Below, piece after piece: positions 24,785 through 36,558 of a stretch of 64,000 nt of DNA. Origin of the DNA: Polymyxa betae A26-41 (taxonomy: Eukaryota; Protista; Endomyxa: Phytomyxea); contig RBZT01000680.1 of the NCBI GenBank assembly GCA_003693705.1, positions 17,481 through 81,480 on the forward strand, given 5' to 3'. The notes under the pieces were generated by a model. The model saw only the letters and a list, made by a program, of their open reading frames with translations, made no database searches and was not told the origin of the DNA. Every line of letters begins with the position of its first letter. The first letter of the stretch is position 1. The translations under genes and the position numbers were made by a program.

Positions 24785-27135
24785 TAGGGGAGTCCAAAGT
24801 TCGGTTAACGGTTAACCGGTTCATCCGCATCGGCGATACCTCGGATCATCGGTTCGGTTAATTCACCGGTTTAACCTCGGTTTAACCGGTTAACCACTGA
24901 AATTTCAAAATCCAAATACACGAATCAAACTCATTAATAACCGGTTAAAATTAATAAAGTCCAAAATAAACAAATCAAACTCCGTTTTATTATTTACTTG
25001 AAATTTCCAAGCAGGCGGTTCCATGAGCGGACTTTCATCATGATTGATATATTTTCGTCTGAGAGTGAGCTACGGTCGGCACTGACGGAATCTCCACTGT
25101 CAGAGAAAGCAGATTCTGATGCGACCGATGATCCCGGCATCATTAGCACGTCCCGAGCTAAAAGACTCAGCTTGGGGAAACGTCCGGATTGCTGTTTCCA
25201 CCAAATTACGGAACATTTACAGGAGCGATCAGGCTTCAGCGTCATCATCGCGTAGTCCTCCACTTCGTCCGTAGAATTATCCTCAGGTCCGCTGGTAGCC
25301 GTAAACAAGTTAAACGATATGTCGGCTTTTTCATCGGAATAGATGACATAATCGTACTCGGCAACCATAATGTCTCGAATTTTTAGCTTAATTTCTACGG
25401 GGGCAACTTGACTGCTCTGCCGTGGATCTAAAAATAATGTAATAGAGGCGGTGTCATTATTCAGGTTCTGTTGATATTTCTCAAGCTTGGTCAACATTGA
25501 TGAAGCAGCTTGCTTGACTGTAGGAGTTGTAAATCCTGTTGATGTAGTTCCAGCAATGGTTTCCAGGCACAGTTTTTTAAGATGCTGATATATCAAAGGT
25601 TTCATAGCGAGAGTGACATAATTTTTCCCACTTGCTGCGTTTGTACATTGAAACGCTTATTCCAGGAAATCTTTTGATGACTTCAAAACACGCCAATTCA
25701 AATCACTCATTTTCATAGAATCAAGCCGTTCTTTAAACTCCGCTTGATTGCAAACCGCTTCAAGAATATCACGATTTTTTAAGCAATTATCAATCATCAA
25801 GAATGTTGAGTTCCAACGTGTTTCGACATCGATATTTGGCACATTTTGAATGAAGGGTCGTCCAAAGACAACGGTGAGATCAGCATACTTTTGACGCATA
25901 AGGCCAGCTCCTCTAATCATCTTGAGAAGGTCTTTTAGCATCGAAATTTCACGCTTGATCAGTTTTGTAGCATCAACAACAGCTCGATTGATTACGTGAC
26001 AAATACAGCGGATATGGGACTCATCTGATGAAGGGGCAGATTCAACTGTAACGTAGTATTCAAGTATGCGCGGACATTTTTCATTGCAGGAATCATTTCT
26101 CCCCCGCTGTCAGACGTGACAGCAACGACACGAGTGTGAAGCTTGAAATCTTCAAGAACGGAGATAATCAGCTCAGAAGTAGTATGCTGATTGTGAGGAG
26201 GAGGAAAATGTTTAAATTCTAAAACAGCATTTTTCAACACCAATCGGCGTCAATCCAATGAAGAGTAATCACAAAGTAGCCCCTCATGACCCTCGATGAC
26301 CATCCGTCAAGCGTCAGAGCTACGCGTCCTGGAATGTCGTTGATTCTCGAGGTAAACTTGAGTAACGATTCCTGATATTGTTCATGTAACGCGCGTCCAA
26401 GCGTGCTCCGACTGGGAAGCGAATAATGCCGATTTAAAGACTTGCAGAAAGCAACAAAAGCATTTGATTCGACCAACGAAAAAGGCTGCTTGTTATCGAC
26501 AATGAATCCGATAAGGTGTTTCAGAATTGAAGCTTTGGTGTTATCGTCAACTTCAAAGGGGTCGGCAACTTGACCTGAGGCGATCAAGATGCAGTGGTTT
26601 TCGTCGCCAGTTTTTCCGTCTTGCTCAATTTTGTGTGAAACGGCCAGATGACGCTTCAGTGTGCTAACACCGGTACTGGCTGCATATGATATATGATTTT
26701 TGGTACATTGAGTGCAGAAAACTCGTCCATCTCGTCTGTTGTAATAAGACCACACCCACGAAGAGTATGCGGAAATTTTACGTTTACGACCTGTTTTCGT
26801 GTAGCTGCTGTGTGTAGCCCTTCATTCGACCCAGATACCTGTGACGAAGCAACAATGCCGCGCTGTTGGACGGCCGATGCAGCGCGGTCCTGAGATTCAG
26901 GCTCCGATTCCGAGAGACTACTACTGGGAGAGAACCCACTGTAATCGGTCATTGAAGAACAGAGAAAGGAGATGAATGAGAAAGAAATCGATGAAATGCC
27001 GCATGCGCAGTTTATGAATTTTTTACCCGGCTAACCGATCGGTTAATCGGTTAGGAGAAAACCATGAACTGGTTAACCGGTTCGCGCGGTTAACCGGTTA
27101 ACCGATTCTTTTGAACCGAACTTTGGACAATCCTA
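24785..27135 (-). mobile_element. Full-length hAT DNA transposon
   Basis: 22-bp TIRs TAGGGGAGTCCAAAGTTCGGTT / TAGGATTGTCCAAAGTTCGGTT; 8-bp TSD GAGGGAGT (24777-24784) / GATGGAGT (27136-27143); subterminal GGTTAACC arrays. Confidence 0.92.
24994..26952 (-). pseudogene. hAT transposase (BED finger, catalytic core, hATC dimerisation domain), frameshifted
   Basis: WSYY..C..C..STLKRHL..H, LTLDGWSS, VTSDSG, DVETRWNST, WWK..RFPKLSLLARDVLMMPGSSVASESAFS. Confidence 0.92.
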
Positions 27136-27143
27136 GATGGAGT

Positions 27144-27600
27144 ATATCGTAAAATCAGGGGAATATTCGTCGAATATCCAGCGCCAGTCATTAAAACACG
27201 TCCAGAATCAGGCTTATATAATTCCATACACTACCTCCCCCAAGGCAAATTTATGCAGGAAGGTAGAAAATTTGTGAAATTGCATATGTAGAAACACCAG
27301 TAAAACCGCCCGCATCAAACCCTGTGGGATAAATATTGGTTTTGGAAAAAAGGTCTACTTACTAACAGGTCCACGCACTTTCATTAATGATGCGTCTATA
27401 ATGGGTAAAAATGGGTGATTTGGATAATACTTCACGAAGTTATGGATAGCACTTGGCGAAAGTTTTTGGATAATTTTTCCTGGGCACCAGGTATTTTCTA
27501 GATCGGAAGGTCCTCTCCATTGTACCTGGTATTCAACATCAGTACAAGTTGCATTTTGTCTAGCATCACGGATTTTCTCAACCTGTTGATTAGACATGTC
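27144..27600 (-). mobile_element. Chromovirus 3' end: chromodomain, PPT and start of 3' LTR
   Basis: VEKIRDAR..VEYQVQWRG..ENTWCP; PPT GGGGGAGGTAG (27241-27231) then TGTATGG at 27230. The LTR is interrupted by the hAT element. Confidence 0.75.
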
Positions 27601-27604
27601 ATAT

Positions 27605-30600
27605 CCCTAGGCCACCGATATTAGGAATGTATACATATTATCACTCAACCGGACTTTTCTATAATTTGCGTGAACTGGGCAATAAAAAGAATATATTCTT
27701 ATTAGCTTGTCACAGAATACTGAAACGGCAGCCGTCTGTTATGAGGCCCCAGCTGATTGTTTGTATTTTTGAAGATAACATATCTGTTTTAGGATCAAAA
27801 GGTACGCTCAGCAAGATCCATTGCCTCTCTTGACCTATTCTCTTTCCAACTGGATCCCTGCGATTCTACATTGCTAATATGGCTGGACCAGAGAGGACGT
27901 TCCTGAATGGGAGATTGTTGACGAAGACGAATTTCTTGATAGCGCTGGTGGCCCCCGTTATAAACAGTTCCTTCGAACCATTGTCGATCGAATTTCTAGA
28001 AACTATGCGAACCGTCGTGTGGGAGCGTCGCGCAGAGAAATGGTTTTGACCGTGATCGAGCCCGCTTTCCACAGACTAGTGTCATTCTTCAACTCCGCGA
28101 TGCCAGCGAGCATTCAGCACACAAAAGTCGCTGAATATTCGCTTTATTAGAACTGCTTTAGTGATGTCAGCTTTGAACTGTTCTTCCGACCAAAAGTTCG
28201 AGATCATGGAGGGTCTTAAACTACCAGTTTTGGATTACGGACGACTTAAATAACTGTTAGAAAGCACCCGAGCGTACTCAGCATTGGGGAGAACTGGGTC
28301 ATGGACACGTGGATGACGCTCAAGGCGACCATACACCAAAATTCATGGAGCTTGAATGGATTCGTTTGGAGGAGAGCCGACGCCGCATTCTGGACGCTGA
28401 CAACGCGTGGTTTGTTGTTGATGATGACTTGATCAGTTCAAGAGCACAAGATGTTCAAGTTAAGACTTTGAGTCAGAGGAAGGCTGGCAAGGATTGACAC
28501 ACAGCTTATGTCTTGGCTGATAAGCATTCTCGTATTGGAAAAGCAAGTAAGCTACGTGTGAGAGGTGCGAAACAAGAGGAATCTGTTGATTACCTGTTCA
28601 AGCTACTGACAAACCATCACGCTGGATCTCTTCGAAGCTGTGGTGACTCAAGATCGGGGATACGGGAACCCTGAAATTGAAATGAAAACGGTTCAGAGCG
28701 GAATGGGGTGCACCCTCATCATGCCGAATCACCTTATGAATCACCACCCCTATGCCTGATGCCTCAGAATCACAGCTTCAGGCATCGAAGCTGCTGCCAC
28801 TTTTTATAAGGCAAGGAACAACCAATCTACTTTCGAGATCGGCCAAAGTGATGATGATCCTGACGAAAATGATGAAGTTGATGATATTGACACTGACGGA
28901 ATGGCAATCGGTTTGCATGAAGTTGAATCGAAACGAAAACACGAGGTCATTCTGATAACAAATCTGGGTAATGCCAGAGCATCTTTGCTTGGGGCCGATG
29001 TTTGGGCGGCTTCGAAAAAGGTCAAAGTTGCTGGACAATCTAATGCTGTTTCAATGCAGGTATTCGCTATTGCCGTTCGCGAGCGTGACGATCAGAAAGC
29101 CTGTAAAAGATTGAGGTTGTGCATCGCGTGGCCCAGTATTCTTTAATTTTTTCACAAATGGATGACGGTTTATAATGATCTAAGCAAATGCAATGCCAAT
29201 AATACTTTGTTGTTTCCAGAAGATTCTGCTGTTACGAAGACCCGGTCACGTGTAATTATTGAAGAAGCAGTTGCGGGCCTATGCGCAGACTGGTTTCAGC
29301 TGCGAAGCTATCGTTGCACTGCCACTATGGCAGCATTTCTGATTCGTCTTGACACGTTCGCTCACAGGTTCATGTCGCGTTCTTGTTCAATTAATGTTAC
29401 TGACGCTCCAGATTCCGATGGCATTATTCAAATGTTTGTGAAATCGTGGTTTCATCGACACTCATCCACAGATATTATGCGAAGAGGAACGAAAATGAAG
29501 CTCGAATTGTTGAAGCCATTTCAGACCTGAGCATTGTCGACCACATCTGTGAGGTTGGCTTGATTCGACACAAGACCCTTCAATGGGCTGCAGCTTCCCC
29601 TGATGGTATAGCGATGATCTCGATTCCTACTGGGGTTTTCCCTTGTGTTGTCGAGATCAAGAGCGAGATCGTTGGCTCCAGCGTTGACGCAGCTGTTGCT
29701 GTTCGTAACAGATACGGCACGTTGATCTACTTGAAAGTTGAGGACGATGTTTGGTGGGAAGCAATTCCTAAAGAGCATCGGGCGCAGCTGCTGCATCAGG
29801 TATGGAGATGGGTGAGATTATCATTGACGTGATCCTGTAACAACATGATCTACAAGTTTGTGTCTCTGAATTCAACTACTTTATCTACTGCAAGGCTCGG
29901 GAAACATCTCCAATCTATTGTGCAGTTGGGTACGTCACGTTTACTCAAAAAGATGCCTTCATCGGCGCTTTCACCAACGTGGGAAATTCTCCGCTTGACT
30001 GGACGCACACGGACGTCAGGCCCCATGATGTTGTCCTGCCGGCATGGATCGAAAATCAGACTCGGATATTCTTCGTTCGCATTATCGCTTTTGGAGAATG
30101 ATTCAGGATACTGCTCAGTTGAAGGGACCATTGAAACCTGTCAAAGTCTCTAAGCACAGTGCGCAATCCCTTTATTCAAAGATGAAACGGGGAGTTGATG
30201 GTGCAGCTGACTATTTATCTCGAATATCATTCCCACTGGCAAACTTGCCTTCGAGGTTAAATTCGTGCTGAGGTCGGTAATTATGGTTGTCATCAACGCA
30301 TGCATCGCATACAGAATGCATAGATGACGAGATTTGGTTGATAGCGGTGATAAATTCCCAAACAGATTGCTGAATAATTGTTAACGATCTGTGGCGAGAG
30401 TCGAATATGTATCAGATTGTATATTCAAGGCCGGTAAGGAATTGCTAGTCTCTGCCCCAACTGTACCGCCTCCAAACGCTGATGTTTCGACAAGTGAATC
30501 TACATAGGCACGCGGCTCGTTGACAAAAAAACAGGTGGCGTTATTGCAAGCAAAGATTCCAATCAGGGAACCTTTGAAATTTTTCAACTCTCAGGACGGG

Positions 30601-31472
30601 CAACTCTTACGAGATTCACGAGGCAATCACGTTCCCATTATGAACGCAACCGACCCAAAGACAAATAAGCCGTATACTCGTGGCAGAAGATGCGTTTCGT
30701 GCGTTCGGGAGTTAAATCGTACTGTACCACCTGTCGCCAGTTTATGTGTGCATCCGTCCTAGGCACTCAAAGCACAGCCTGCGCCGTTACGCTCCACCGA
30801 CGAAAGAAGTTGGCCTCGACGAGAGATACAACTCGTCAAAAACGAAAGTATTCGATTTCGGATGAGCAACCATAAAATCGACTGCAACGTCGTCTGAAAT
30901 TGTCAGATTCGAATGCAGACCAGGAGGCAAATCTTGCAGATGATCGAGATCGAACAGTTGGCGATTCTAATGATCAACTGTCCGATTGTTATGCAGATAT
31001 TGTTGACGGGGAGCATGCCAACCACGTTTCTCACACTTTTGGAGTCGAGGCGAGTACACCCTCTTCACAATGGCCAGACGGGGCCAGAGAATCATGAATA
31101 TTTTTCTTAGACCGGTTCCTAGCACGGCATCCAGGGCATGAAATCGCCACTATGCATCGTACTCGACATTTAAGTGACGAGCCTAAGAAGATTCAACGGC
31201 ATTTTCTAACCTTAGATTTCAGAAAAAGGGCTTTTGAGATAATAAGAATATAGTCTTAATAAAGAAAATCTCCGATGTGAGCCCTATCAATATTCAAAAT
31301 CAATTTATGAAGCAACCGACAGGGCAACAGAGAATATGTTTTGGAACTGAGCTGGGGAGAGCATTGCAGCCATCACCCAAATAAAAACCGAGTTGATAAC
31401 GCTGTTTACTCGCTTGTACAGCATTCCAAATTGCTATTCGGAATATATTGTTAAGATCTCCGTGGCTTAGGG
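27605..31472 (+). mobile_element. piggyBac-like DNA transposon with ATAT TSD and an embedded YqaJ-like exonuclease domain
   Basis: TIRs CCCTAGGCCACCGA / CCCTAAGCCACGGA; ATAT at 27601-27604 and 31473-31476. Removing the element restores the gypsy integrase-chromodomain frame. Confidence 0.85.
27870..30875 (+). pseudogene. piggyBac-fold DDD transposase fused with a YqaJ/lambda-exonuclease-like domain and a C-terminal Cys-rich domain
   Basis: VVDDD (28420), QDRGY (28652), DWFQLR..RCTAT, RGTKNE, ASPDG (29596), VEIK (29653), QLLHQ, YSKMKRGVD (30197), VINACIAY, CxxC..CxxC..C..C..H tail. Confidence 0.8.
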
Positions 31473-31476
31473 ATAT

Positions 31477-32104
31477 TGAAGCTGCTTAATAATAACATCA
31501 GTTATATCAAGATGTTTATCACAATAAAACTGAATCCGATCACAATGTATTTGTTGTATCTCTCCAGTGAGCAAATTTTCAACTGTGAAAAAAGTCAGAT
31601 GCATGAAAATCGACAATTAGATGAGGTCCATGCCATACAAAATCGAGTATATTATCAGTTTTGTTTCTTGTAATGGAACAAGACATCGTCGCCAACATCA
31701 AAGTTAGGCAATTCCAATGTTTTGATTTACTATCTCGGTGAGATTGCCGCTCAGTCTCTGTAGCAGCTACAATTGCTTTATGCATATACCGGTACTGAAA
31801 ACTATTCTGCCAGTTTTCAATTGAATTTACAATTTGGTCTGCTTGAATATCATCAGAGCTAATAGCAAACGTTTTGTGCTATAAAAATTAATATCTAGAG
31901 GGTTGTCAGCTGGCCATCCGGTCATTACAGTGATCGGCCGGTGAAAAGCTAAACGACATGTGGACGATGGTTTATGACATACATGTTGCACCAGTTTTAC
32001 AAAACAAGGCCAATCAGCGTAATCAGAGCGAAATTCTGATATTATACAAGGTATTAAATTTACAACATTACGATTCACAATTTTAATCGTGCCATTTGAG
32101 TATG
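31477..32104 (-). pseudogene. Gypsy integrase C-terminal half (continues into the chromodomain at 27600)
   Basis: YSNGTIKIVNR, ISEFR..DWP, PITVMTG.PADNPLD, WHGPH, HCDRIQFYCD. Confidence 0.85.
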
Positions 32105-32156: not shown

Positions 32157-33021
32157 ATGCGGTTGAAAAGTGCAGCGGACGGAAAATGCGGCGGCGGATT
32201 TTTCAAAGGGCTGCGCCAGAATTGCGCCCACTGGGAGAATGGAGCTGCATTCTCTGCAATTATCCATTTCTGGGCGTCAGCCATGTCGACTGAATCGGCC
32301 CCGAACCTAGCTCCTTCCACTCCGTCTAGCCATGGGACGAGCAAGCGGGCAAGAGGTCGACCATCTAAGGATGAGAACCGTGAAAAACCAATAGCTTGGT
32401 CTAATGGTATGGTGGAGCAGTTGATGGAGCTGCGTTCTAAACAGTTTTATGATTTTTTCAAAGATAGTAAGCATTGTCACCGCATTTCAGATGGCTGGAA
32501 CAAAATAGGATACGAAATGACCAAAACAACTGGGCAAAACATCACCAAAGATAAGGCACGACAGAAATTCACACAATTAAACAAAAAATGGCGCCATCAC
32601 AAGCCCGATGGAAAAGAATCTACCAAAACCGACAATGAAGACCCTGGTGATAATAATAAAGACGAAGGTTTCGAATGACTGCTGCTCAGGTCAGAGAGTC
32701 AATCATTCAGCTAGGGGTCAACAATTGATCACTAATGTACAACCAACAAAAACTAACCTGATCGGCAATGGAATAGCATTGATGGGTCTGTCCTTGGAAG
32801 GCGGCCTTGCTGGACTTTCAGAAGGGCTCAATAATATTGCTTCCTCCTTATACTGCCAGGTGCCGGAAAAGACCAATGAAGAAATGCGGTCGCTCATGAA
32901 AGGAGTCAAGGAAGATCAAAACAAAACTCGAGAGGCTCTTGAGCGGGTAGCCACCATGCTAGAGCGGGGTGCAGCCGTCCAGGAAGCACTTCTCGAATTT
33001 CATCGCTCTAAGAAAGATTGA
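32157..33021 (+). pseudogene. Myb/SANT-like DNA-binding protein (Harbinger ORF1)
   Basis: WSNGMVEQLMELR...GWNKIG...ARQKFTQLNKKWR trihelix motif plus a coiled C-terminus. Confidence 0.8.
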
Positions 33022-33053
33022 GTGTAACTACAGCACATGCAGAATACTTTATA

Positions 33054-33779
33054 TCATTTTCGTTGCGCCCACAAATAAGCTCGAATTAGGTCACGACTTT
33101 TCTTAGCTGCCTCTCCAGCAACTGCCACAGCTCCGTTGCCTGCGAGATTATCATTGGAGTCAATTTCAATTATAGGTTGATGGGCGTCTCCCTCCACCTC
33201 TACGTACACATCGTGCAGGTCGATAAGGATATTACGCAGAATAAGGCAAGCTCGAACAATTCGTGCCATACGCTTAACACTCACCTTTTCGTATCGACAG
33301 TCAGCTCGGCCATTGCCTTCGTTGCCTTTCTGATTCAACGGTGCTTTGAAAATGCGGAAACGGTTCTTCAAAAGCCCAAGAGCTATTTCGATGTTGATCC
33401 GAGTAATTGAATGAAGGCTATTATAATGTTTCTCCTGGGAATCTCTGGTGTCATTGTCATACGGTGTCAATGCAATGTGTGAACAGCTGGTATCCTGTAT
33501 CAGCGACGATCCCCTTACAAGCAGGAATAATAGCTGCAATAGTCCGGCCAAATTTCGAGCGGTTATAAACACCTTTGTCGTTCTCGGATCCAGGGAGATT
33601 CTTTCGAGGAAATGATACGAAATTGTGCGTAAAAAGTATGATGAATTTACGGCCAACCCTATTGTATTGATAAAATAATAAATCACCAGGGTCCACTTCA
33701 GTCGGGCCGAGTACATCTCCGTTCCGATCGCCGATAGTCCGTGACCATAAACTTTTGCGTGGTCTGCTATCCAACACAT
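33054..33779 (-). pseudogene. HARBI1-like transposase, 5'-truncated
   Basis: PGSENDKGV, VADTGY, LTPY, YNSLHSITRINIEIALGLLKNRF, ACLILRN. Confidence 0.85.
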
Positions 33780-33789
33780 ACCGGTACTC

Positions 33790-34203
33790 TCATTGAATTG
33801 TCATTAGGTCACGTCATCCATGATCGCCAGCGAGTAGGCATCGTAGAAATCGTCCAGGCCGGCTACCTCTCTCGAGCCATCGTCCAGGAAGGCTACCTTT
33901 TCTCCGGAGCCAAGTAGCAAAAGACATAATTTCCATTCCAGGATCTTCAGTGTCTGTAGAGCGGATCTTCAACTGCAGTCGAGAGGAGATTGGGCTACGC
34001 CGGTTTTCTGTGAAGCCAGACACTACGCGCATTAATTTTCGGAAAATGTGCTTTGAAGGCTGGAAAAAATTCAACATCATTTTTTCCCTTTTTTTCAAAT
34101 TGTTTTGTTTCGGTACCGGTACTACCGGTATCGGACCCGGGTTTTCCGGTCGGTACCGGTAAAATGGCGATACCCGACCCGTGAATACCCGATCGGAGCC
34201 CTA
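33790..34203 (+). mobile_element. 3' end of a second hAT element (hATC domain and terminus)
   Basis: VAKDIISIPGSSVSVERIFN; TACCGG/ACCCG subterminal repeats; ends ...GGAGCCCTA (reverse complement TAGGGCT). Confidence 0.75.
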
Positions 34204-36558
34204 AATATTGCATCTACGGTCGTAATGGCCCATCACTTCAGAGATGAAGTACGACGCGATATCCGTGACCAAAATTTGCGGACTGCCAAACAGGACTCGC
34301 CATTCCATCAGCGCTTCCACTGTTATCATGGCGTTCGGGGTATGTGCTGGGGTGATTTTGATCATACCTGTCAGGTCTTCTCTCAAAATCGGATTCCATT
34401 GATAATCATGGGATCCGCTTTGGGGTTCTGGCATTACATATATCTAATCCATATGCAGCACTTTATTACGCTGCATCCCATGAACGGCTTCTCCGAGTGG
34501 CCTTGGAATTCTGACTCCACCTCTGGTTGGGAGGCAGTGTAAACAAAGTTTACACAATTTCCTCATATATTTTTCGCAACATTTCCACCGGCAGAATATT
34601 TTTTTGTCGCTGCTTTATATCCCAGGTGGCCACTGTTTCCCCCGCTATGCGCAATAACACATAACCGCGTCTTCAGATCTTCAATCTGATCAGGAATTAT
34701 AATCCTGCCATCCTTCACACTTCAATCCTTCTGTATTAACTTTAATAAAATCTTCTGTATTGAGCCACTTACTTTGTTCACTTCTGATTTCTTCTAAGTT
34801 TGGCCATTTAAAATCTCTTTGCAACGGCCTCACTCTCATCTCTCGTACGGTGAGCTTCTCTGCCGTATCATGAAATGGATCTGGCGCTCCCCATCTAGTC
34901 ATAAGGTCTGCCAAACATTTTGTTCACCACTGATATGTTCAATATCGTAATTAAAACGCTGGAATTCTAGCGCCCATCTCTGCAACTTTTGGGCAGTATG
35001 TTTTGATACTTCTTTTGGTGAAAAAATCTGGACAAGATTTTTGTGATCGACAAACAGTTTAAACGGTCTCTTCATTTGTAATAAATAGTCTAACTTCTGA
35101 ATTGTGTCCTTTATAGCAAATCCTTCTTTTTCTATTACGGACCATTTTAATTCGACTGCGTTAAACCTGTGCCCTACAAATACTAGGGGCTCATGTCTCT
35201 GCAGCTCGACTGGTTTCTCGGCGTCTTTTATCGGAATCTGCGTGACCATCCCCGATGCGTTATAATCATTGGCATCAGTGAACATGCACTGAATTCGGTC
35301 CTCTCGCGGAAACCCGAGCGTCCCACTCTGCGCAACGGCCATTTTTAACTTTTCAAATGCCAATGCGTGTTCAGGGCCCCATCCAAACTTCATAAATCAG
35401 ACTTGCCGTGCTGCACTTTTCTTCCTGCTCGGCATTTTCTTCATGCATTCCTCAAATATTTGCTGAAGTTTATATACTTTGGAGTTAAATTCTGGAATTG
35501 ATCGGCTCATCCACTGCACTGCCATTCAGAACTGTTGCAGATCCCTTACTGTCTTCGGTTGTGGAATATTGAGCAATGCTTCTATCCGTGCGGGATCATG
35601 CTCTACCCCTTCTGATGAGAACACTCTTCCACAGAATTTTACTTTATTAGCGAACAGGTCGCCTTTTGTAACATTAAACTTGATGTTGGACTTCTTTGCT
35701 ATTTTAAGGGTTTCTTCCAAACTGTTNNNNNNNNNNNNNNNGATAATCAACTTCTTATACATCATGTCTTTGAACACTTCTGACATTCTAGCCTGAAATT
35801 GTTTCGCTGAGTTCAGCGCTCCTTGGATGGATCTGAAAGGGTATACCGGTAGACTCCTCTATCTGTCATAAAGGAGAGCATCTCCCTACAGTCTTCTGAC
35901 AACTGCATCATCCAGAAACCTTTGAAAGCGTCCAGCTTGAACAATATCTTCGATCCAGCCAGGTGATTGACAATTGCTTCCATGAAAGGCATGGGTCAGA
36001 CCGTACTTTCGCATAGAGCATTAACTCCACTCAAGTCTACAGTCATTCTACGGCCTCCATCTGGTTTCTTCACTACCAATACAGGCGATGCCCATTTATT
36101 TCTTCTATTAGACCGTACTTCGATAGTTCATCAGTAAATCTCTTTCAGAAATTCACTATCTTCTGGGCTATACTTCCTAGCCTTGCACTTGTATGGTGCT
36201 ACATTTTGCTTCAGTTGGGTAACGAATGGAGTAACCTGCAGGACGGTCTGGACCAAGACTTTTCCACCAATCGGATTTATATTTCCGTATCAATNNCAGG
36301 CAGTCCATTGTCTGCAGCTTTTTTCCTCATTTCATTTAGGCTGCATTCAATCTCAAGCGGACATATTGCCCCAATGCCAACTTCCTCATCTGCTGGGCTT
36401 ATCCGCTGCGCAATTTCTTCATTGCGTTCTTCTAAATCTTCTGTATTGTCCAAAGACGTCACTTCATCTTCGTCTTCTATATTATCAATAGGCCTATTTT
36501 CGNNNNCTTCAATAAATCTCCTCCTAAGAAGATTTCGTCACTGGGTGCATCCCAGAGA
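34204..36558 (-). pseudogene. Gypsy-A pol (protease C-terminus, RT, RNase H, integrase N-terminus)
   Basis: EIFLGGDLL, WASPVLVVKK, LDAFKGFW, VKFCGR, FTDAND, IEKEGFAI, VDHKNL, KLQRWAL, HSGETVATW (HHCC region). Confidence 0.9.

What the first reader, a model, noticed from the sequence alone, without database searches (positions are those of the whole stretch)
27601..31476. piggyBac-like transposon whose transposase contains a YqaJ/lambda-exonuclease domain between its catalytic aspartates
Seen in sequence: one colinear, now frameshifted, reading on the + strand carries piggyBac-type motifs: D1 FVVDDD (28420), D2 QDRGY (28652), D3 LYSKMKRGVD (30197), VINACIAY and a C-terminal Cys-rich finger (30690-30800). 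Between D2 and D3 lies a full YqaJ-like motif set: DWFQLR..RCTAT, GTKNE, ASPDG, VEIK, QLLHQ. Established: piggyBac has an insertion domain between its 2nd and 3rd Asp; YqaJ/lambda exonucleases are 5'-3' resecting PD-(D/E)XK nucleases; in ISL2EU-type elements YqaJ is a separate ORF. Inference: a single cut-and-resect enzyme that may couple excision to end processing or homology-directed repair of the donor site. Divergent piggyBac lineages exist in TE databases, so novelty needs checking.
Basis: partly seen in the sequence, partly recalled or inferred. Interest (0 to 1): 0.88.

Follow-up and report, generated by a model that had tools for sequence, protein, structure and literature searches.

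The report
piggyBac transposase with embedded exonuclease
This is a dead copy of a jumping gene from a widespread protist, algal and fungal lineage of piggyBac whose cutting enzyme carries a second, fully conserved DNA-chewing enzyme inside its own catalytic core, possibly to force the hole it leaves to be repaired by copying the element back.

Summary
Confirmed. Window 27605-31472 is a decayed 3,868-bp transposon in what matches the Polymyxa betae draft genome. It has CCC...GGG terminal repeats and an ATAT target duplication, proven by an empty site elsewhere in the genome. About 30 long, uninterrupted relatives (plasmodiophorids, a diatom, a red alga, metagenomes; fragments in an oomycete and chytrids) share the order D1-D2-exonuclease-D3-Cys finger. 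Both active sites are invariant at 20-40% identity. An AlphaFold model matches piggyBac transposase (Z 26, residues 88-940) with lambda exonuclease nested inside (Z 15, residues 463-813). The nuclease is therefore no secondary insertion. The window's branch is the most divergent found: no SAP domain, ATAT target. Some relatives moved recently. The nuclease's job is untested. I favour resection of the donor break, steering repair to homologous recombination and restoring the element (about 45%). The main rival is trimming of the transposon's 4-nt overhang (about 25%). No paper searched describes the fusion, but Repbase was not checkable, and its piggyBacX group may be this lineage. This scan already reported the architecture on other DNA of this genome.

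The parts
27601..27604 (.). Left target-site duplication ATAT
   Evidence: single ATAT in empty site L005
27605..27621 (+). Left terminal inverted repeat, begins CCCTAG
27682..27707 (.). Subterminal repeat, inverted partner of 31237-31257 and 31433-31452
   Evidence: D1, I4, I9
27879..28407 (+). N-terminal and DNA-binding/dimerisation region of the transposase, broken by stops and frameshifts
28408..28756 (+). RNase H-like core, first part, with D1 (28420) and D2 (28652); one stop and one frameshift
   Evidence: P0169 47-73% identical; P0169 vs family profile prob 95%, E 2e-8
28760..29280 (+). Insertion domain, enlarged by an acidic loop (about 28840-28910)
   Evidence: piggyBac insertion domain per PMC7351741
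29281..30150 (+). Lambda/YqaJ-type PD-(D/E)XK exonuclease domain, no SAP; frameshifts; short in-frame loss just before the WF motif
   Evidence: model of P0168 vs lambda exonuclease Z 15.0
29800..29855 (+). 56-nt intron, acceptor decayed to AA
   Evidence: same position in L002 and L051; spliced reading in P0168
30151..30510 (+). Return to the RNase H core with D3 (30197) and second half of the DNA-binding domain
30685..30800 (+). C-terminal Cys-rich finger, split by a frameshift
   Evidence: E 0.0013; sister copy hits PF13842 E 1e-5
31456..31472 (-). Right terminal inverted repeat
   Evidence: same end plus ATAT in second copy L002
31473..31476 (.). Right target-site duplication ATAT
27144..31790 (.). 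Host repeat of about 770 bp (27144-27604 plus 31477-31790) that the element interrupts
   Evidence: more than ten uninterrupted copies at 64-85% identity

Best explanation
[quoted passage not shown] Follows from known piggyBac chemistry: the DDD core nicks the 3' ends, forms and opens hairpins, inserts with a 4-bp stagger, and leaves donor ends with complementary 5' four-base overhangs that normally religate seamlessly, so the element is lost from the donor site. Inferred: the tethered 5'-to-3' exonuclease attacks those 5'-phosphorylated donor ends as they are released beside the insertion domain, removes the cohesive ends and exposes 3' tails, so the break is repaired from the sister chromatid or homologue and the element is copied back. 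Cut-and-paste thus becomes duplicative.
For: Fold: piggyBac 6x67 Z 26.4 over model 88-940, lambda exonuclease Z 14.8 over 463-813; window's own branch Z 15.0. Among 35 long proteins (a few near-identical) D1 and D2 are 35/35, D3 31/32, and the nuclease E, S-x-D, E-x-K and Q are each 34/34, W 35/35, R 34/35; by my knowledge of lambda exonuclease these include the metal ligands and the 5'-phosphate pocket. Positions matching piggyBac hairpin contacts Y439/N440 and omega-loop R275/K290 are largely kept. CCC ends and 4-bp TSDs in all delimited families. The insertion domain lines the DNA channel in piggyBac (PMC7351741). Most branches add a SAP DNA-binding domain in the nuclease, which suits processive action. 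Other superfamilies have recruited the same nuclease or RecQ helicases (PMC9587614, PMC4122938).
Against: No activity was measured, and no excision or repair product was observed. Lambda exonuclease is processive as a ring trimer (own knowledge) whereas piggyBac is a dimer. The window's branch lacks SAP. Relaxed N-T-A-N targets with perfect non-palindromic TSDs in some relatives (TTAC in P. brassicae, CTAC in L091) fit overhang trimming at least as well. Copy numbers per family in this genome are low.
Confidence: 0.45

Rival explanations
1. The nuclease trims the 4-nt 5' overhang carried on the transposon ends after hairpin opening. Host gap filling then gives a clean TSD at any accepted site, which frees the element from strict TTAA matching.
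For: Recently mobile relatives show many flanks: ATAA, CTAA, TTAA, CTAT, TTAG for one identical 4,212-bp element; CTAC, GTAG, TTAT, CTAG for another. Perfect non-palindromic TSDs: TTAC in P. brassicae, CTAC in L091. Sister families use TTAA, TATA or ATAT. The idea came from earlier finding s1-673870.
Against: Two Fragilaria copies on long genome contigs have CTAA|TTAA and ATAA|TTAA flanks, and two metagenome contigs have CTAA|TTAA and TTAA|TTAG. That is what a retained TTAA overhang at a near-cognate site would leave, though later point mutation or chimeric assembly could also give it. All three reliable ends seen in the window's family, and the right end of L051, are ATAT. A large nuclease with a SAP domain seems excessive for four bases.
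Confidence: 0.25
2. The nuclease cuts the non-transferred strand, as the PD-(D/E)XK protein TnsA does for Tn7, replacing the hairpin step.
For: TnsA precedent (own knowledge); nuclease tethered beside the active site.
Against: The closest folds are 5'-end exonucleases (lambda, LHK, R354), with the end-binding residues kept. Hairpin-contact positions are retained.
Confidence: 0.1
3. The nuclease has a role outside end processing, such as destroying excised or competing linear DNA, or serving mainly as a DNA-binding platform.
For: Viral relatives of this fold have varied roles (R354, herpes alkaline nucleases). A Dinochytrium protein keeps the architecture without catalytic residues.
Against: Catalytic residues are invariant in transposon-borne copies. 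Nesting inside the catalytic core points to a role at the transpososome.
Confidence: 0.15
4. The nuclease segment is a secondary insertion or a chance juxtaposition in a dead element.
For: The window copy alone is fragmented, and its Pfam scores are below cut-off.
Against: About 30 long single ORFs with the same order; P0168 runs from insertion domain through nuclease to D3 in one frame in this very branch; a 313-aa open frame crosses the left junction in the second copy; no internal termini.
Confidence: 0.01

Closest known systems
piggyBac (T. ni transposase, PDB 6x67; piggyBat 9c0f)
   Same: Fold of core, DNA-binding domain and Cys finger; DDD triad; D1-D2 spacing about 83 aa in relatives versus 78; CCC...GGG ends; short TIRs with subterminal repeats; 4-bp AT-rich TSD.
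   Different: D2-D3 is about 490-780 aa in intact relatives, not 101, because a whole nuclease (usually with SAP) is nested there; 14% identity; TSD is ATAT here, and TTAA, TATA or N-T-A-N in sister families.
KolobokE (PMC9587614)
   Same: [quoted passage not shown]
   Different: Kolobok-superfamily transposase (C/DxxH, ends 5'-RR..YY-3'); nuclease lies downstream of the transposase domain, not inside it.
ISL2EU (PMC4122938)
   Same: YqaJ exonuclease on a DDE transposon.
   Different: Separate ORF; PHIS-type transposase with THAP.
Lambda exonuclease / YqaJ, LHK-Exo, mimivirus R354
   Same: Fold (Z 11-15) and catalytic motifs.
   Different: Stand-alone viral enzymes; here a domain inside a transposase, usually interrupted by SAP.
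Repbase piggyBacX and piggyBacA (from memory, not checked)
   Same: Divergent piggyBac groups; I recall piggyBacX from red algae and oomycetes, which overlaps this host range, and ATAT TSDs for piggyBacA.
   Different: Unknown: no searchable paper mentions either name in this sense and Repbase/Dfam were not available.

Membership tests
piggyBac superfamily | DDD triad in RNase H-like core with piggyBac fold | tested here: met
   on intact relatives; window branch tied to them
piggyBac superfamily | Short TIRs starting C[CAT][CAT] | tested here: met
   CCCTAG, 17 bp; criterion from PMC5381638
piggyBac superfamily | 4-bp target duplication | tested here: met
   empty site
piggyBac superfamily | TTAA target (canonical) | tested here: not met
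   ATAT here; PMC5381638 lists ATAT as a rare piggyBac site; sister families C607 and L049 do have TTAA. Not a canonical piggyBac, but within the superfamily
piggyBac superfamily | C-terminal Cys-rich domain | tested here: met
piggyBac superfamily | Hairpin intermediate and seamless excision | not testable with these tools
   contact positions largely conserved; no biochemical or excision data
YqaJ / lambda exonuclease family | Fold and PD-(D/E)XK motifs with 5'-end pocket | tested here: met
   Pfam PF09588 below cut-off (15.9 of 22 bits)
YqaJ / lambda exonuclease family | 5'-to-3' exonuclease activity, ring trimer | not testable with these tools
   needs protein work
KolobokE | Kolobok transposase, RR..YY ends, nuclease downstream of the DDE domain | tested here: not met
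   ends CCC..GGG; nuclease inside the core
ISL2EU | YqaJ in a separate ORF beside a PHIS transposase | tested here: not met
   single ORF in intact relatives
Repbase piggyBacX / piggyBacA | Sequence similarity to the Repbase consensus sequences | not testable with these tools
   no Repbase or Dfam access; review not held

The most novel reading that the evidence does not exclude
An undescribed, ancient piggyBac lineage across several eukaryotic supergroups whose transposase resects its own donor break with an embedded exonuclease, turning the textbook seamless cut-and-paste element into a duplicative one; no curated database has recognised the nested nuclease.
Probability: 0.27. Interest if true: 0.82.

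Novelty: new variant of a known kind. Interest (0 to 1): 0.64.

Why it matters
Why several transposon superfamilies carry exonucleases or helicases is unexplained, and how seamlessly excising piggyBacs gain copies is a fair question. Here nuclease and transposase are one protein with separable active sites, and intact, recently mobile members exist, so single mutations can test the role directly. The lineage also offers natural piggyBac-fold enzymes with ATAT, TATA and relaxed N-T-A-N targets and shows that the insertion domain tolerates a 350-aa enzyme, which is useful for transposase engineering. The window copy itself is dead.

Tried and rejected
Pfam scans of window pieces gave only sub-threshold YqaJ, and PF09588 found nothing in the genome: the lineage is too divergent for these models. 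Ten paper searches and targeted reading found no description of the fusion. The Repbase review and the paper on non-canonical piggyBac sites were not held. The tree is a quick unrooted one: the window branch is very long and its place is unsure; no claim on order of events. Atlas searches gave only leads. Rejected: secondary insertion; ATAT as part of the TIR (the empty site has one ATAT); Kolobok or ISL2EU membership.

Full report
Setting. The window's assembly has 1,001 contigs and 27,085,814 bases; the Polymyxa betae draft has 1,001 contigs and 27,085,946 bp (PMC6328671), so the host is almost certainly this plasmodiophorid. The neighbourhood is a transposon graveyard with hAT, Harbinger and Ty3/Gypsy remnants.

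Observation. The element interrupts a repeat of about 770 bp; a copy of that repeat on contig C965 joins the two flanks over a single ATAT, which proves the boundaries and the 4-bp duplication. A second, 5'-truncated copy on C998 is 89% identical and ends in the same TIR plus ATAT. The window gene has many stops and frameshifts, and a 56-nt intron at 29800-29855 whose acceptor has decayed. The same intron position occurs in the second copy and in metagenome locus L051, and protein P0168 shows the spliced reading. I searched pieces and exons apart and left out any joined or repaired model.

One protein, not an accident. The second copy has a 313-aa open frame from just after D2 into the nuclease. 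Its closest database relatives are P0169 (D1, D2, insertion domain) and P0168 (insertion domain, whole nuclease, D3 in one frame), 61-63% identical. A more distant family on C988 led to relatives in Fragilaria crotonensis and Phytophthora capsici. A profile of these found 950 cluster representatives at E up to 0.001; only the best 150 were seen, and the rest may include ordinary piggyBacs. Nearly all proteins over 800 aa among them show D1-D2-nuclease, and those that reach that far continue to D3 and the Cys finger. Named hosts include Plasmodiophora brassicae, Fragilaria, Porphyridium aerugineum (transcriptome) and two chytrids. The family profile finds 48 matches on about 17 contigs of the own genome. 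The window's branch aligns to the family over the D1-D2 region (prob 95%, E 2e-8) and over nuclease plus D3 (prob 99.8%, E 2e-30). It is colinear but lacks the SAP domain that splits the nuclease in other branches and has a longer acidic insertion domain; it is the longest branch in a quick tree.

Identity of the two halves. The family profile hits T. ni piggyBac (E 7e-5, including the KGGVD region), mimivirus R354 (E 0.007) and LHK exonuclease (E 0.05) among solved structures. A model of intact P0021 (mean pLDDT 80.6) superimposes on piggyBac 6x67 at Z 26.4 (377 residues, rmsd 3.8, model 88-940) and on lambda exonuclease at Z 14.8 (202 residues, model 463-813), so one fold is nested in the other. 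A model of P0168 from the window's own branch matches lambda exonuclease best among 48,161 chains (Z 15.0, rmsd 3.2). The graft sits at the end of the insertion domain, which in piggyBac spans 372-433 and lines the DNA channel (PMC7351741). Among 35 long proteins the three aspartates and the nuclease residues W, R, E, S-x-D, E-x-K, Q are invariant or nearly so at 20-40% overall identity, so both active sites are maintained.

Mobility and targets. Delimited families all have C-rich ends: ATAT here, TTAA on C607 and in Fragilaria L049, TATA on C723 and C476, and TTAC on both sides of the intact P. brassicae copy. The P0021 element (4,212 bp, same protein and ends) has different flanks in different metagenomes, and so does the P0080 element: both moved recently and use N-T-A-N sites. 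Metagenome flank pairs may be chimeric. Two Fragilaria genome copies have CTAA|TTAA and ATAA|TTAA.

Mechanism. Shown: architecture, folds, conserved sites, 4-bp stagger. From established piggyBac chemistry: hairpin excision leaves complementary 5' overhangs on the donor, which religate seamlessly. Positions matching the hairpin contacts are largely kept, so the hairpin route probably persists. Inferred: the nuclease acts on a 5'-phosphorylated end made by the core. I favour the donor ends (45%): resection would block seamless closure and favour repair from the sister chromatid, restoring the element. Trimming the transposon's own overhang (25%) explains relaxed targets and perfect non-palindromic TSDs but sits poorly with the one-sided TTAA flanks. 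TnsA-like second-strand cutting (10%) and roles away from the ends (15%) are weaker. The flank data are few and do not decide.

Comparison and novelty. It works like piggyBac and meets the superfamily's testable criteria except the canonical TTAA. [quoted passage not shown] No searched paper describes this fusion. From memory, Repbase has divergent groups piggyBacX (red algae, oomycetes) and piggyBacA (ATAT); I could not check them, and I put the chance that this lineage is already catalogued there at about 40%. Verdict: real, a new variant of a known kind, interest 0.64.

Noticed in passing
P0162 (Dinochytrium kinnereticum KAJ3209788.1): Same transposase-plus-nuclease architecture with catalytic motifs of both domains degenerate; possibly a domesticated pseudo-enzyme.
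   Followed up: partly
L082:2736-6566 (P. brassicae CP145414.1): Intact-looking element with TIRs and a perfect TTAC duplication, next to housekeeping genes; annotated only as a SAP-domain protein.
   Followed up: partly
G000:C723:7753-10690 (upstream of the window, L055/L068): A second, SAP-type, TATA-flanked element of the same lineage on the same contig.
   Followed up: partly
L051:2262-2265: Left flank of the closest full-length relative reads CATC while the right flank reads ATAT; unexplained.
   Followed up: no
window 27144-27604 and 31477-31790: The interrupted host sequence is a non-coding repeat family of about 770 bp with more than ten copies at 64-85% identity; type not determined.
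   Followed up: partly
window 24994-26755 (minus), 32157-33779, 34200-35400: Decayed hAT transposase; Harbinger-type pair (Myb/SANT plus DDE_Tnp_4, convergent); Ty3/Gypsy RT-RNase H remnant.
   Followed up: partly
L002:1-870: The second copy is 5'-truncated and preceded by a Copia-type RT/RNase H remnant (read from translation).
   Followed up: no
window 27020-27110: Cluster of GGTTAACC palindromes, repeated on other contigs; probably the end of another element.
   Followed up: no
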